In this document: positions 1,706 to 54,038 of the stretch, piece after piece
Position numbering within the stretch: the first letter of the stretch is position 1
How the letters are laid out: each line of letters begins with the position of its first letter
IMG/VR virus record: IMGVR_UViG_3300041411_000080
Span: 256,859 to 320,858 of that record
Length of the DNA stretch: 64,000 nucleotides
Strand: one strand, 5' to 3'
The notes under the pieces: model-generated
What the model saw: the letters and a program-made list of their open reading frames with translations, nothing else
Database searches by the model: none
What the model was told of the DNA's origin: nothing
Made by a program: the position numbers and the translations under genes

Positions 1706-2127
1706 TAATACTTAGGAACTGCGAGGAAGATCGTGTCATTAATCCGTTGATAATGAGCGTACATTCCTGCATGTTCGGGTTGGAATATAAGGCATCGGTA
1801 CAAAGCCGACCAAGCGAGATGACAAGTTTCGAATGCACGTTGCTCGTCATATGTGATATTTCTCAGGTTACGGTGAACCCAAGTATGTTCGAACGAATTG
1901 ATAGCCCGACAGATCAGGTCATCGATTACGTTCTCACGGTGCACTCGGATCTTTTGGTCTCCTATTGAACCTTGCTTAATAAGGAAGGCATGATCAGGGT
2001 TATGACCAATCTCCTTTAAGTATCGCGTCTGTGCGATATGGTTAATAAAGGATAGATCCAGCAGCGGTAATACGGGACGTATGTCGAAGGTCAACATTAC
2101 GTGGGGGAGAACAGGCTGGTTATACAT
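1705..2127 (-). CDS. hypothetical protein
   Basis: 140 aa; GAGGA SD upstream. Confidence 0.75.
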   Translation of the reverse strand: MYNQPVLPHVMLTFDIRPVLPLLDLSFINHIAQTRYLKEIGHNPDHAFLIKQGSIGDQKIRVHRENVIDDLICRAINSFEHTWVHRNLRNITYDEQRAFETCHLAWSALYRCLIFQPEHAGMYAHYQRINDTIFLAVPKY

Positions 2128-4585: not shown

Positions 4586-5030
4586 ATTGAATTTTCCTAC
4601 GATGGAATAGAAGAGGTTTGGCCCTAAGACCCATGACTAGTTCAGGTACAACCATTGAAGTTACACATTGCGTGAGATTGCCGGTCTCGAATGGCAGGCG
4701 TCTATCAAACTCGGATACCGATTTCAGTTTGATCGGAGTGAGTGTATGACCACATGCCACGTAATAGCGTTTATAGAACTTCTTATTCAGTCGCTCCTCA
4801 ATAACAGGATGCGACTGGAACTTAGGTAACTTGATTCGCATCCCATTAATTTCACGCCAGAGTGGTAGCAGATCGTAATGGACTATTTCTCCGACTTCAT
4901 AAGCGAAGAGTAATGCCAGTACAGGATCTGGGTTCTCGGCAATCTCCCGTATCGTTGTGGTATGGGTTGAAAGTACAAGACCTAAGTCCCCTGCAACGGC
5001 ACTATCTATCCGTGCTTTGGACTTAGACAT
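4575..5030 (-). CDS. hypothetical protein
   Basis: 151 aa, GAGGTG SD. Confidence 0.7.
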   Translation of the reverse strand: MSKSKARIDSAVAGDLGLVLSTHTTTIREIAENPDPVLALLFAYEVGEIVHYDLLPLWREINGMRIKLPKFQSHPVIEERLNKKFYKRYYVACGHTLTPIKLKSVSEFDRRLPFETGNLTQCVTSMVVPELVMGLRAKPLLFHRRKIQYEL

Positions 5031-5395: not shown

Positions 5396-5853
5396 TTGTT
5401 AGCATCCTGTAGGCGTTGTTGAATTTGTGGATGATCAAAGATCGCCCGTTTCAAAGTATAGTAGACGTGAGTATTATGCGCATCAAAGAAACCCACGGTG
5501 TAGTTCAACGAGAAGTCTCGTTTGTACCCAAGGTAGTCAATCATGAACTTTGCACACGCTGGACTACGTGATACACCTGCGGCACAGTGCACCATAATGT
5601 CTTCACCCGGATACTTATCCAAGAAGGTGAGGATCTTTATAGCATCGATATAATCGAATACACGATAGCTATTGTCTGGCGCTTCGGTGACGTCATCACA
5701 GAAGATTCGTTGCACGTCTTTGTGGTGGGTACCGAGAGGATAAGTGTGTCGCTCGTTAGGAGCTAAGCCGTTCCACTCGTTGAAGCTGACCACTGGCACC
5801 GGAGGTTCATACGTCTCGGCTGCCCAACAGTTAAGGACAGTTACTTTAGCCAT
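5392..5853 (-). CDS. Cys-dependent (PTP/dual-specificity-like) phosphatase
   Basis: HCAAGVSRS = HCX5RS active-site loop. Confidence 0.85.
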   Translation of the reverse strand: MAKVTVLNCWAAETYEPPVPVVSFNEWNGLAPNERHTYPLGTHHKDVQRIFCDDVTEAPDNSYRVFDYIDAIKILTFLDKYPGEDIMVHCAAGVSRSPACAKFMIDYLGYKRDFSLNYTVGFFDAHNTHVYYTLKRAIFDHPQIQQRLQDANK

Positions 5854-53120: not shown

Positions 53121-53207
53121 GGAGAGGTTCCCGAGCGGCTCAAAGGGACCAGACTGTAAATCTGGCGTCTATCGACTTCCAAGGTTCAAATCCTTGTCTC
53201 TCCACCA
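53121..53207 (+). tRNA. tRNA-Tyr (GTA)
   Basis: GGAGAGG/TCTCTCC acceptor, CCAGA-CT-GTA-AA-TCTGG, long variable arm, GTTCAAATC, encoded CCA. Confidence 0.96.
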
Positions 53208-53225
53208 AATACAGAGGTGTTTGAT

Positions 53226-53390
53226 ATGAAGGTTAAAATTAATCCCCGCCCATTAGTCAACCATGGTCCAGCTGATTGTCGCTGTTGCTCACGGTTGAAC
53301 TGGAAGGATCTTAAACTTGATAAGCAAATTCTCAAAGAAGCTGTAAACGATGCTGACTACGCCCTCAGCAAACGTGAACAGCGTGCATAG
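53226..53390 (+). CDS. 54 aa protein inside the tRNA cluster
   Basis: GAGGTG SD; MKVKINPRPLVNHGPADCRCCSRLNW...QRA. Confidence 0.6.
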   Translation: MKVKINPRPLVNHGPADCRCCSRLNWKDLKLDKQILKEAVNDADYALSKREQRA

Positions 53391-53474: not shown

Positions 53475-53550
53475 TCCATGATAGCTCAGTTGGTAGAGCC
53501 CACCGCTGTTAACGGTGTTGTCCCTGGTTCGAGTCCAGGTCATGGAGCCA
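53475..53550 (+). tRNA. tRNA-Asn (GTT)
   Basis: TCCATGA/TCATGGA acceptor, CACCG-CT-GTT-AA-CGGTG, GTTCGAGTC, CCA. Confidence 0.96.
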
Positions 53551-53554
53551 ATTT

Positions 53555-53580
53555 AAAAGAGAACTTCGGTTCTCTTTTAT
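53555..53580 (+). terminator. UUCG hairpin between tRNAs (terminator or processing signal)
   Basis: AAAAGAGAAC-TTCG-GTTCTCTTTT. Confidence 0.65.
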
Positions 53581-53590
53581 TCAGTGTTAC

Positions 53591-53666
53591 ACATGCCTAG
53601 CTCAATTGGCAGAGCAGCTGCCTCCAAAGCAGTTGGTTCCAAGTTCGATTCTTGGGGTGTGTGCCA
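53591..53666 (+). tRNA. tRNA-Trp (CCA)
   Basis: ACATGCC/GGTGTGT acceptor with two G.U pairs, GCTGC-CT-CCA-AA-GCAGT, GTTCGATTC, CCA. Confidence 0.92.
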
Positions 53667-53668
53667 AA

Positions 53669-53766
53669 TTGAATGTAATGTAGAACTCGGGTTCAACTCC
53701 TGAGATTTGGACGGCCCGCCTAACAGGGCTATTAGCTTAAGCTGGTTAAAGCGGCATTACATTCGA
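53669..53766 (+). ncRNA. circularly permuted tRNA mimic (YrlA/Y-RNA-like topology)
   Basis: 13-bp terminal stem, T-arm, closed acceptor-like hairpin and D-arm, in that order; no anticodon loop. Confidence 0.75.
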
Positions 53767-53787
53767 CTTAATCCCTGTGCACGGGGA

Positions 53788-53895
53788 TACAATGTTCATG
53801 TGGATTACGATAGTGTGAGCGCCTCGTAAGCGTGAGAAGACCCTAGGCCTCAGGACAGAGGGAAAAGACCCGTAGCCACCGGAGAGAACATTGTA
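53788..53895 (+). ncRNA. unknown structured RNA
   Basis: Perfect 10-bp TACAATGTTC/GAACATTGTA closing stem continued by GTGG/CCAC and TACG/CGTA. Confidence 0.5.
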
Positions 53896-53958
53896 GTGCG
53901 TATACTTGGACGTCCCTCCATCGAACTGAAGCGTAGTTGGGAAACCAGTGTGATATTT

Positions 53959-53986
53959 GAGAGTCCTTCGGGACTCTCTTATGTCG
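53959..53986 (+). terminator. terminator of the tRNA/ncRNA cluster
   Basis: GAGAGTCC-UUCG-GGACTCTC then TTATGTCG. Confidence 0.85.
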
Positions 53987-54038
53987 TCTCAAGGATTACC
54001 AGACGGTATAGATGTATAGTTAACTAATCGAGGTGAGT

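What the first reader, a model, noticed from the sequence alone, without database searches (positions are those of the whole stretch)
53669..53766. Circularly permuted, anticodon-less tRNA mimic directly behind tRNA-Trp (YrlA/Y-RNA-like topology)
Seen: TTGAATGTAATGT (53669-81) pairs with GCATTACATTCGA (53754-66) as a 13-bp stem in place of the anticodon arm. Between them, in permuted order, are a 5-nt variable loop AGAAC, a canonical T-arm TCGGG-TTCAACT-CCTGA (53687-703), a 7-nt insert, an acceptor-like hairpin ACGGCCC-gcctaaca-GGGCTAT closed by a loop (53711-32), then U8-A9 and a canonical D-arm GCTT-AAGCTGGTTA-AAGC with the GG. The stretch GGGCTATTAGCTTAAGCTGGTTAAAGCG reads like an ordinary tRNA 5' half. 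Established: bacterial YrlA Y RNAs have this T-arm/closed acceptor/D-arm order and normally lie next to a Ro60/Rsr gene; no such gene is recognisable in this window. Inference: a phage tRNA-elbow mimic that can neither be charged nor decode, possibly a decoy for tRNA-targeting defence enzymes or an adaptor for a host or phage protein. Standard tRNA scanners would probably miss it.
Basis: partly seen in the sequence, partly recalled or inferred. Interest (0 to 1): 0.88.

Follow-up and report, generated by a model that had tools for sequence, protein, structure and literature searches.

The report
Orphan permuted tRNA-like phage RNA family
Right after a phage tRNA gene lies a roughly 100-base RNA gene that has the parts of a tRNA in shuffled order and no anticodon; it belongs to a previously unlisted family found in the tRNA clusters of several unrelated large phages, and its job is still unknown.

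Summary
Window 53669-53766 (+), 2 nt after tRNA-Trp in a phiKZ-like jumbo phage, folds into a 13-bp closing helix that encloses a T-hairpin, a closed acceptor-like hairpin, UA and a D-hairpin. ARAGORN and Rfam 15 do not detect it. It is not chance: I found 23 distinct homologues. They occur in jumbo Pseudomonas phages, pf16, Peetri, Seunavirus phages of Cronobacter, Enterobacter and Salmonella, one T5-like phage, and viral or metagenome contigs. Most sit inside tRNA clusters on the tRNA strand. The closing helix differs completely in sequence between members but always pairs (13 of 13 pairs with compensatory changes). The segment GGAM-GGCCC-GCC-(1-5 nt)-AACA-GGGCY-RW-UA-GCUU...AAGC-G is essentially invariant. 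The family was absent from 185,579 bacterial and archaeal genomes, E. coli genomes and plasmids. The topology matches YrlA Y RNAs, but there is no Ro60/Rsr gene, no Rsr-binding motif and no specific similarity to a real phage YrlA. The acceptor-like stem is conserved for only 5 bp, and 4 members lack the T-loop. The best reading is an Rsr-independent tRNA-body mimic, co-transcribed with tRNAs. Its invariant hairpin (discriminator-like G, CC, disposable linker, AACA leader) is probably an RNase P/CCA-type processing site or a protein recognition site. Function is untested.

The parts
53591..53666 (+). tRNA-Trp (CCA anticodon), the upstream neighbour. The element starts 2 nt after its 3' end.
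   Evidence: ARAGORN; Rfam tRNA 60.3 bits.
53669..53681 (+). 5' strand of the closing helix, which stands in place of the anticodon stem.
   Evidence: 13 bp with 53754-53766. The family helix has 13/13 pairs with compensatory changes. A close relative in runs X19/X7 carries 53674 T>A together with 53761 A>T, and 53754 G>A turns G.U into A-U.
53682..53686 (+). Junction AGAAC (variable-loop position). AGA is nearly invariant. C53686 pairs with G53704 as a sixth T-stem pair.
   Evidence: Alignments A1/A3. Pair col20-col38 is CG in 15 members and UA in 2.
53687..53703 (+). T-hairpin: 5-bp stem TCGGG/CCTGA with the 7-nt T-loop TTCAACT.
   Evidence: The inner three pairs covary. A canonical T-loop is present in 19 of 23 members.
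53704..53712 (+). Linker GATTTGGAC between the T-hairpin and the acceptor-like stem. It ends in the invariant GGA(M).
   Evidence: The invariant columns G42 G43 A44 were not part of the search pattern. Alternative pairings with the junction AGA or with positions 4-7 are possible but unresolved.
53713..53730 (+). Acceptor-like hairpin: GGCCC (53713-17), invariant GCC (53718-20), variable linker T (53721), invariant AACA (53722-25), GGGCT (53726-30).
   Evidence: The sequence is invariant across the family. The exceptions are one G-C to G.U change (L025) and the variable Y at position 5 of GGGCY. The relaxed pattern with a free stem sequence found no covarying variants.
53731..53734 (+). AT (positions 6-7, not conserved as pairs), then the invariant UA that corresponds to U8-A9.
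   Evidence: The same UA dinucleotide links the acceptor-like and D stem-loops in YrlA (bioRxiv 10.1101/312249).
53735..53753 (+). D-hairpin GCTT / AAGCTGGTTA / AAGC with the GG, followed by G (position 26).
   Evidence: The stem is invariant in the family. GG is present in 20 of 23 members.
53754..53766 (+). 3' strand of the closing helix.
   Evidence: As for 53669-53681.

Best explanation
Window 53669-53766 encodes a stable non-coding RNA of about 98 nt. It belongs to an unlisted, phage-restricted family with a circularly permuted tRNA architecture: closing helix, then T-hairpin, then closed acceptor-like hairpin, then UA, then D-hairpin.

Shown:
- The family exists and its helices are maintained by compensatory changes.
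- It sits on the tRNA strand inside phage tRNA clusters, often 0-4 nt after an upstream CCA.
- It has no Ro60/Rsr partner gene.

Inferred mechanism:
- The RNA is transcribed with the tRNAs and released by the host tRNA-processing nucleases. The closing helix protects both ends.
- In most members the D- and T-loops form a tRNA-like elbow, so the RNA presents a tRNA body without an anticodon.
- The functional site is the invariant acceptor-like hairpin. Its loop reads like a tRNA 3' end (discriminator G, then CC) tied through a disposable 1-5 nt linker to a 5' leader (AACA) in front of G1.
- I therefore think host RNase P and 3' trimming with CCA completion recognise it, and possibly open it, as happens to M. 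smegmatis YrlA. The product is a tRNA-body mimic, closed or nicked with a free CCA end.
- That mimic would occupy a host or defence factor that reads the tRNA acceptor or elbow. This would be an accessory, anti-defence-type function that is traded horizontally between phage tRNA clusters.
For: Existence and structure:
- Exact anatomy and fold in the window.
- 23 distinct homologues in at least five unrelated phage groups.
- Closing helix: 13/13 pairs show double-sided changes, 0/500 shuffles reach the score, and slid controls fall to 26-53% paired.
- The alignment-free helix test agrees.
- The T-stem covaries, including a sixth C-G/U-A pair.
- G.U pairs occur only on the + strand reading, and the orientation is the same as the tRNAs.

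Gene context:
- 14 of the first 18 loci lie in tRNA clusters, many directly after ...CCA.
- Peetri's copy stands alone and is followed by its own hairpin plus U-run.

The hairpin as functional site:
- GGA.GGCCC-GCC-var-AACA-GGGC is invariant while the loop centre varies in length and sequence.
- Precedent: YrlA has the same arm order. M. smegmatis YrlA is cut by RNase P in this loop and gains CCA in vivo (PMC4201824).
- From established knowledge, not tested here: bacterial RNase P pairs with the substrate's 3' RCC, and RNase T stalls at 3' CC.

Distribution and partners:
- Phage-only: 0 true hits in 185,579 genomes, E. coli genomes or plasmids.
- No conserved protein neighbour across lineages, so the partner is likely a host factor.
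Against: - There is no direct evidence of a discrete transcript or of its ends. The only RNA-library signal is a low-depth metatranscriptome contig of a relative, which could be DNA carry-over.
- The acceptor-like stem is only 5 bp and is separated from the T-stem by a 7-9 nt linker. Stacking of the acceptor on the T-arm, and hence RNase P measuring, is not assured.
- Energy folding often pairs the junction AGA with the linker UCU, which would give a non-tRNA four-way junction.
- Four of 23 members lack a T-loop and three of them lack the D-loop GG, so elbow mimicry cannot be the universal function.
- An A follows GCC in only 4 of 23 members, so a CCA end would need post-transcriptional addition.
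- The stem and loop flanks are invariant, so covariation cannot confirm that hairpin.
- No partner protein or target defence system has been identified.
- The family is rare and patchy: about 12 of 50,697 GenBank phage records by BLAST, plus Psa21 found only by the DNA-pattern scan.
Confidence: 0.45

Rival explanations
1. It is a genuine YrlA-type Y RNA that works with the host's Ro60/Rsr. It would tether or gate Rsr and exoribonucleases during infection, and the phage would supply only the RNA.
For: The arm order and the UA linker are identical to YrlA (bioRxiv 10.1101/312249). Phage-encoded YrlA/Ro60 pairs exist (PMC4201824, PMC12135203; Bxz1 locus). Some host genera, for example Salmonella, have rsr (literature).
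Against: The Rsr-binding motif GNCGAAN0-1G is absent from the window element and from 19 of 23 members. The four hits are at chance level or lie in the upstream tRNA. The closing helix, where Ro60 would bind, has no conserved sequence. There is no TROVE protein among the 10 longest window ORFs, none next to any member, and none in any Pseudomonas, Salmonella, Cronobacter or Enterobacter phage in GenBank. Model R1 scores the true Bxz1 YrlA at 13 bits, no better than tRNA-tRNA junctions.
Confidence: 0.07
2. It is a cis-acting processing or 'punctuation' module. A tRNA-shaped spacer would recruit RNase P, RNase E or 3' exonucleases so that the flanking tRNAs (and, in this window, the downstream structured RNA) are cut out correctly. 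The excised piece would have no function of its own.
For: It abuts the CCA of an upstream tRNA in many loci, and another tRNA or RNA follows within a few nt. The hairpin loop looks like a trailer-leader junction.
Against: Four members (Peetri, L019, L020, L023) have no tRNA within the fetched flanks, and Peetri's has its own terminator. Most phage and bacterial tRNA clusters are processed without such a module. Sequence invariance of about 45 nt across unrelated phages, together with a protected, long and covarying closing helix, argues for a stable trans-acting product. The neighbours differ from locus to locus (Tyr, Lys, His, Trp upstream).
Confidence: 0.15
3. It is a permuted or split aminoacylatable RNA. 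After RNase P cleavage and CCA completion, the two-piece molecule would be charged by a synthetase that ignores the anticodon. It would then act as an amino-acid donor, or like the tRNA domain of a two-piece tmRNA.
For: The gene order (T-arm and acceptor 3' strand first, then acceptor 5' strand and D-arm) is that of permuted tRNA and two-piece tmRNA genes. G73-C74-C75 equivalents are invariant. One member has G3.U70 (L025).
Against: G3-C70, not the alanine G3.U70, occurs in 22 of 23 members. No tag reading frame or pseudoknots are conserved downstream, because the flanks are unrelated between members. ARAGORN, which models permuted tmRNA, finds none. There is no known identity set for G1-C72/G2-C71/G3-C70/G73 minihelices (my knowledge). 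The acceptor is only 5 bp.
Confidence: 0.08
4. It is an inert relic: the inner part of a tandem duplication of a tRNA gene (3' half of copy 1 plus 5' half of copy 2) that happens to fold.
For: Tandem duplication is the accepted origin of permuted tRNA genes. Model R1 weakly hits ordinary tRNA-tRNA junctions.
Against: There are 23 diverged copies in unrelated phages. The closing helix is saturated with compensatory changes while the core stays invariant. A relic would decay, and would not be transferred repeatedly between compact phage genomes.
Confidence: 0.02

Closest known systems
YrlA (Y RNA-like A) of bacteria and of Ro60-encoding phages (Chen et al. 2014, PMC4201824; Wang et al. 2018, bioRxiv 10.1101/312249, PDB 6CU1)
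   Same: It has the same circular permutation: a helix made of the 5' and 3' ends in place of the anticodon stem, then the T stem-loop, a closed acceptor-like stem-loop, UA and the D stem-loop. T-loop and D-loop tertiary nucleotides are kept in most members. In M. smegmatis the acceptor-like loop is opened by RNase P and receives CCA.
   Different: There is no Rsr/Ro60 gene nearby or in any carrier phage, no GNCGAAN0-1G Rsr-binding module, and no second helix below the closing stem. The family has its own invariant acceptor-like hairpin (GGAM-GGCCC-GCC...AACA-GGGCY) and a 7-9 nt linker after the T-stem. It sits in tRNA clusters of Gram-negative virulent phages. The covariance model does not specifically recognise the real YrlA of Bxz1 (13 bits).
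tRNA-like domain of two-piece (circularly permuted) tmRNA
   Same: The gene order is T-arm plus acceptor 3' strand first, then a linker removed by processing, then the acceptor 5' strand. The T-loop sequence GGUUCAACUCC and the 5' GGGCUGAU resemble tmRNA termini (comparison made from memory).
   Different: This family has a canonical D-arm. It has no G3.U70, no tag ORF and no pseudoknots. The long helix is closed on itself rather than leading into an mRNA-like domain. ARAGORN finds no tmRNA.
Permuted tRNA genes of Cyanidioschyzon merolae and other algae
   Same: The 3' half is encoded upstream of the 5' half, with the acceptor ends joined by a short linker that RNase P and a 3' nuclease remove.
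   Different: Those mature into normal decoding tRNAs through a circular intermediate with a bulge-helix-bulge motif. Here there is no anticodon loop, the stem is 12-27 bp, and the host is a bacterium without the splicing endonuclease.
Phage T4 species 1 and species 2 RNAs (rnaC, rnaD)
   Same: They are small stable RNAs of unknown function encoded at the end of a phage tRNA cluster and cut out of the tRNA precursor. rnaC ends in a T-arm-like hairpin.
   Different: There is no sequence or structure match to the family model, and the sizes differ (139 and 119 nt).
Phage RNAs matured by RNase P (P1/P7 C4 antisense RNA, P4 CI RNA); named from my own knowledge
   Same: These are phage regulatory RNAs that carry a tRNA-like acceptor or T-type element so that host RNase P generates the active molecule.
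   Different: They act by antisense pairing on phage mRNAs and have no D-arm, elbow or closing helix. No antisense target is evident here.

Membership tests
YrlA / bacterial Y RNA | Arm order T stem-loop, closed acceptor-like stem-loop, UA, D stem-loop, all inside a helix formed by the RNA's 5' and 3' ends | tested here: met
   compared with the description in bioRxiv 10.1101/312249 (AC nt 15-27/83-93, TSL 33-49, AS 50-64, UA 65-66, DSL 67-81).
YrlA / bacterial Y RNA | Encoded next to, and co-regulated with, a Ro60/Rsr (TROVE) gene | tested here: not met
   No shared protein neighbour within +-6 kb of 18 loci. No TROVE among the 10 longest ORFs of the window. tblastn with Bxz1 Ro60 finds 358 phage records, none from Pseudomonas, Salmonella, Cronobacter or Enterobacter phages. 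Only 64 kb of the roughly 321-kb source genome was available.
YrlA / bacterial Y RNA | Ro60-binding module with GNCGAAN0-1G on the 5' strand of the terminal helix | tested here: not met
   Absent from the window element +-60 nt and from 19 of 23 members. The remaining hits are at chance level or lie in the upstream tRNA. The closing-helix sequence is not conserved.
YrlA / bacterial Y RNA | Specific sequence and structure similarity to bona fide YrlA | tested here: not met
   Model R1 hits the true YrlA upstream of Bxz1 gp220 (TROVE confirmed) at 13.2 bits, E=0.027. That is no better than tRNA-tRNA junctions at 12-21 bits. No Rfam family matches at E<=10.
YrlA / bacterial Y RNA | Bound by Rsr; modified by TruB and DusA | not testable with these tools
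   Needs immunoprecipitation and modification mapping.
Canonical tRNA (RF00005) | Cloverleaf with 5' and 3' ends in the acceptor stem and an anticodon arm with a 7-nt loop | tested here: not met
   No ARAGORN or Rfam tRNA call. The acceptor position is closed by a loop, and a 13-bp open-ended helix replaces the anticodon arm.
tRNA-like elbow (D-loop GG with T-loop UUCRANY) | T-loop and D-loop GG both present and co-conserved | tested here: inconclusive
   Present in the window and in 19 of 23 members. L011, L014, L023 and L031 have plain hairpins instead of a T-loop, and three of them lack GG. The joint loss fits an elbow contact, but it shows the elbow is dispensable for the family. No 3D test was possible.
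Two-piece (permuted) tmRNA | G3.U70 alanine identity, CCA end, tag reading frame and pseudoknots in the coding piece | tested here: not met
   G3-C70 in 22 of 23 members. Downstream flanks are unrelated between members. ARAGORN finds no tmRNA.
Permuted tRNA gene (algal type) | Ends of the precursor form a bulge-helix-bulge motif and are ligated to restore a normal anticodon or other loop, giving a decoding tRNA | tested here: not met
   The helix is 6-27 bp, with unconserved flanks and no anticodon-loop sequence.
T4 rnaC/rnaD stable RNAs | Homology to T4 species 1 or species 2 RNA | tested here: not met
   cmsearch with filters off on the T4 tRNA region matched only tRNA junctions at E<0.05. 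The only overlap with rnaC was 6.9 bits, E=1.3.

The most novel reading that the evidence does not exclude
The RNA is deliberately opened in its acceptor-like loop by host RNase P. It is then trimmed back to ...GCC (RNase T stalls at CC) and completed to GCCA. The result is a two-piece, anticodon-less tRNA body with a genuine CCA end, held together by the closing helix. This molecule would serve as a phage counter-defence bait for enzymes that attack or modify tRNA acceptor ends or tRNA bodies, such as nucleotidyltransferase toxins of the AbiE/MenT type, CapRel-type pyrophosphokinases, or acceptor- and variable-loop-cleaving nucleases. Alternatively it could be an anticodon-independent amino-acid carrier. 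Either way it would be a new class of phage-encoded RNA anti-defence element that moves between tRNA clusters.
Probability: 0.15. Interest if true: 0.9.

Novelty: new variant of a known kind. Interest (0 to 1): 0.72.

Why it matters
Phage tRNA clusters are increasingly seen as counter-defence loci, because phage tRNAs replace host tRNAs that are cut by systems such as PARIS, Septu/PtuAB and PrrC. This finding adds a conserved, horizontally exchanged RNA in those clusters that cannot decode yet keeps a tRNA body and an invariant acceptor-like hairpin.

It also shows that the YrlA-type permuted tRNA architecture exists without Ro60. The 'effector' module of Y RNAs, whose partner is still unknown, may therefore have a life of its own. 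That gives an easier genetic handle on the unknown partner, using small lytic phages of E. coli relatives and Pseudomonas.

On the practical side, the family is invisible to tRNA scanners and to Rfam. In several deposited genomes it is annotated as a 'hypothetical protein' or left blank. The covariance model built here (R1) could correct that annotation.

Tried and rejected
- Rfam at gathering and at E<=10: no match for the element in the window. At gathering threshold, none for members in six other loci.
- ARAGORN: only the three ordinary tRNAs, and no permuted tmRNA.
- Megablast of the region against phages: nothing. Only blastn with short words found the homologues.
- T4 rnaC/rnaD as relatives: rejected.
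- T5 itself and most T5-like phages: no BLAST hit; only GSW6 carries the element.
- A conserved protein partner next to the RNA: none across lineages.
- Relaxed DNA pattern with a free acceptor-stem sequence, to look for covariation in that stem: it added only one G-C to G.U variant and chance hits.
- Pattern requiring only the T-loop plus the acceptor 3' strand: no new architecture.
- Bacterial and archaeal genomes, E. coli genomes and plasmids: no member.
- A 7-bp acceptor stem, or a shifted register with a 4-nt bulge: neither is supported well enough.
- Read laying: only assembled contigs were available. It gave no information on RNA ends and no proof of transcription.
- Literature searches for a prior description (permuted tRNA in phage, tRNA mimic in tRNA clusters, Y RNA without Rsr): nothing specific in the searchable library. 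The family could still be one of the unnamed candidates in PMC10690425. The YrlA supplementary alignments were not available.
Full report
**Where the element sits**

The window comes from a phiKZ-like jumbo phage. It contains a phiKZ gp29PR tail-sheath domain, DUF7193 and ribonucleotide reductase. The exact sequence occurs in IMG/VR contig IMGVR_UViG_3300041411_000080, which is 320,858 bp. ARAGORN and Rfam call three tRNAs on the + strand: Tyr 53121-53207, Asn 53475-53550 and Trp 53591-53666. The finding lies 2 nt after tRNA-Trp.

**Checking the observation**

- 13-bp closing helix, 53669-81 with 53754-66, including two G.U pairs
- AGAAC junction
- T-hairpin, 53687-703
- 7-nt insert
- hairpin ACGGCCC/gcctaaca/GGGCTAT, 53711-32
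- UA
- D-hairpin with GG, 53735-52
- G53753

RNAfold reproduces the closing helix, T-hairpin and acceptor-like hairpin (-35.3 kcal/mol, z = -3.5). Neither ARAGORN nor any of the 4,227 Rfam models reports it, even at E<=10.

**It is a family, not a coincidence**

Sensitive blastn with the 116-nt stretch found matches of 74-82% identity to the inner 65-90 nt in unrelated phages:
- Pseudomonas phage pf16 (Chakrabartyvirus)
- Pseudomonas phage Peetri (200 kb)
- Cronobacter, Enterobacter and Salmonella Seunavirus phages (GAP31, EC152, FENT2, NINP13076, KE22, KE23)
- one T5-like Salmonella phage, GSW6

DNA-pattern scans built on the conserved hairpin added Psa21, four further jumbo-size contigs and other IMG/VR and metagenome contigs. 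A covariance model (R1) scores all of them at 79-106 bits. In total there are 23 distinct sequences.

The inner core is nearly identical everywhere. The closing helix has a completely different sequence in each lineage, yet it always pairs:
- It runs 6-27 uninterrupted pairs anchored at the same two junctions (median 12). Shuffled 3' flanks reach >=10 pairs in 0.6% of trials.
- On the alignment, all 13 closing pairs show double-sided changes.
- 91.5% of cells pair versus 69% in shuffles. The covariation score is 0.63 versus 0.18, with 0 of 500 shuffles reaching it. Sliding the partner strand drops pairing to 26-53%.
- RNAalifold independently predicts the same four helices.
- Contigs of a close relative in public runs carry 53674 T>A together with 53761 A>T, and 53754 G>A (G.U to A-U). 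These are compensatory changes in the window's own helix.

G.U pairs and the shared orientation with the tRNAs identify the + strand as the RNA strand.

**Refined anatomy**

- The T-stem is effectively 6 bp. The extra pair is C-G in 15 members and U-A in 2. Many members have a conserved tandem U.U inside it.
- The acceptor-like stem is conserved for only 5 bp (GGCCC/GGGCY). Pairs 6 and 7 of a would-be 7-bp stem hold in 4/18 and 7/18 members.
- A shifted register with a 4-nt bulge is possible but not convincing. Energy folding prefers the simple 5-bp hairpin in 16 of 23 members.
- Folding also often pairs the junction AGA with UCU in the linker, which would extend the T-arm. Psa21 shows one compensatory change there, but registers differ between members, so this stays open.
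- The invariant segment is GGA(A/C)-GGCCC-GCC-(1-5 variable nt)-AACA-GGGC(C/U)-RW-UA-GCUU-A...A(A/G)AGC-G.
- Part of that invariance was imposed by my search pattern. GGA, AACA and AAGCG were not imposed. The BLAST-found members, which were independent of the pattern, share all of it.
- A relaxed pattern that left the stem sequence free found only one extra variant, a G-C to G.U change at position 3:70. The hairpin is therefore constrained at the sequence level.
- Four members (L011, L014, L023, L031) carry an ordinary 6-7 bp hairpin in place of the T-arm. Three of them also lack the D-loop GG. This joint loss fits a D-loop/T-loop contact in the other members, but it shows the elbow is not the universal functional part.

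**Context and distribution**

- Fourteen of the first 18 loci lie inside tRNA clusters on the tRNA strand. In many, the helix starts 0-4 nt after the CCA of the upstream tRNA, which is Tyr, Lys, His or Trp.
- Peetri's copy has a 27-bp helix, no tRNA nearby, and is followed by its own GC hairpin and U-run. This argues for an autonomous RNA gene.
- No protein family is shared by the neighbourhoods of different lineages.
- The family is rare. About a dozen of 50,697 GenBank phage records carry it by BLAST (plus Psa21, found only by the pattern scan), along with 17 IMG/VR loci and 8 metagenome contigs, some of them duplicates.
- It has no true match in one genome for each of 185,579 bacterial and archaeal species, in 5,426 E. 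coli genomes, or in 72,556 plasmids.
- Its patchy presence (one T5-like phage, one clade of Vequintavirinae, some but not all phiKZ-like phages) points to horizontal exchange between tRNA clusters.

**Comparison with YrlA**

The literature confirms that YrlA has this arm order and the UA linker. It also shows that M. smegmatis YrlA is cut by RNase P in the acceptor-like loop and acquires CCA in vivo (PMC4201824; bioRxiv 10.1101/312249). I tested membership feature by feature:
- The Rsr-binding motif GNCGAAN0-1G is absent from the window element and from 19 of 23 members. The other hits are at chance level.
- No TROVE protein is found in the window's long ORFs or next to any member.
- Using mycobacteriophage Bxz1 gp220 as the query (TROVE and vWA_Ro60 confirmed), tblastn finds Ro60 in 358 phage records. 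Almost all are actinobacteriophages. None is a Pseudomonas, Salmonella, Cronobacter or Enterobacter phage.
- R1 does find the real Bxz1 YrlA upstream of gp220, but only at 13 bits through generic T-arm and D-arm features. That is the same level as tRNA-tRNA junctions.

So the element works like the tRNA-like module of YrlA, but it is not a member of that family.

It is also not:
- a two-piece tmRNA (no G3.U70, no tag ORF, unrelated downstream flanks, no ARAGORN call)
- an algal-type permuted tRNA gene (no anticodon loop to restore)
- related to T4 rnaC or rnaD

**Mechanism**

Shown: this is a structured RNA gene family in phage tRNA operons with a permuted tRNA-like secondary structure and a sequence-invariant acceptor-like hairpin.

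Inferred:
- The RNA is co-transcribed with the tRNAs and cut out by the tRNA-processing machinery. The closing helix protects its ends.
- The loop of the invariant hairpin reads as discriminator G + CC, a disposable linker of variable length, then an AACA leader before G1. That is the layout of a tRNA 3' end fused to the next 5' leader.
- Bacterial RNase P contacts the RCC of substrates, and RNase T stalls at CC (established knowledge, not tested here).
- Together with the M. smegmatis YrlA precedent, this makes recognition, and perhaps opening, by RNase P followed by CCA completion the most economical explanation for this conservation pattern.
- The resulting closed or nicked tRNA body would then engage a host factor that reads tRNA acceptors or elbows. 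The lack of any shared phage protein, the restriction to phages and the location in loci now linked to counter-defence all fit an accessory anti-defence role.

I put 0.45 on this overall reading. That it is a genuine conserved structured RNA is close to certain. The processing and decoy steps are inference.

The main weaknesses are these:
- There is no transcript-end evidence.
- The acceptor stem is short and is followed by a linker.
- An alternative junction pairing is possible.
- Some members have no elbow.

**Rivals**

The rivals are a pure cis-acting processing spacer (0.15), a chargeable split tRNA-like or tmRNA-like RNA (0.08), a host-Rsr-dependent Y RNA (0.07) and an inert duplication relic (0.02). 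Their evidence is set out in the rival section.

**Novelty**

I found no description of this family in Rfam 15 or in the searchable literature. It may be hidden among unnamed candidates in large screens (PMC10690425). I rate it a new variant of a known kind: an Rsr-independent, phage-borne relative in form of the YrlA tRNA mimic.

Noticed in passing
window 53770-53898 (core); the conserved stretch extends to a hairpin at 53958-53985: A second conserved structured RNA starts 3 nt after the element. Homologues are in 201phi2-1 (L001 2001-2218), Viktualia (L002 2001-2127, directly after tRNA-Ser) and contig L010 (1113-988, directly after tRNA-Trp). It has a 5' hairpin and a long-range helix ACAATGTTC/GAACATTGT, with 8 compensatory pairs among just 4 sequences, around a roughly 70-nt near-invariant core (AUUACGAUAGUG..AGCGCCUCGUAAGCGUGAGAAGACCC...GAGGGAAAAGACCCGUAG). 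There is no Rfam match. In Viktualia the stretch is annotated as a hypothetical protein. It is independent of the permuted element, because the order differs in L010.
   Followed up: partly
window 53217-53390 (+): A small conserved ORF (about 54 aa, MKVKIKPRPL..GPADCRCCSRL.WK.LKLDKQ.L.EAVNDA.Y..KREQ) lies inside the tRNA cluster. It is also present in Psa21 (PSA21_418, immediately upstream of that phage's copy of the element) and in L010 (immediately downstream of its copy). It is found only in the jumbo-phage members.
   Followed up: partly
L001 ~1775-1870 (201phi2-1) and L002 ~1812-1907 (Viktualia): These are tRNA-shaped sequences with an acceptor stem, D-arm with GG, T-arm and CCA, but an over-long anticodon arm (about 9-bp stem with an 8-nt loop in Viktualia, larger in 201phi2-1). 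Neither ARAGORN nor Rfam calls them.
   Followed up: no
L006 ~1390-1486, L013 ~5600-5672, L011 ~4704-4760 (-), L014 ~1826-1900 (-): Directly upstream of several family members lie other sequences that end in an acceptor-like strand plus (A/C)CCA. They are not recognised as tRNAs. One example is a roughly 52-nt minihelix ending GACCA in L011, and L013 has a tRNA-Met-like sequence with an aberrant D region. Phage tRNA clusters may hold more non-canonical tRNA-like RNAs.
   Followed up: no
window 53956-53987: A 32-nt GC hairpin (GAGAGTCCTTCGGGACTCTC...) is 97% identical in about 48 phiKZ-group genomes at unrelated positions. It is probably a shared terminator or processing hairpin of this phage group. 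The simple terminator scan did not flag it because of its short U-run. A similar hairpin sits at 53556-53582, between tRNA-Asn and tRNA-Trp.
   Followed up: partly
L025 1767-1866 (-): This is the only family member with a change in the acceptor-like stem. Its G3-C70 has become G3.U70, which is the alanine identity pair in tRNAs and tmRNA.
   Followed up: no
L009 1489-1611; hits H37, H38, H41 (KE22, KE23, FENT2): In several deposited genomes the family member is covered by an annotated 'hypothetical protein' CDS, which is most likely a mis-annotation of an RNA gene.
   Followed up: no
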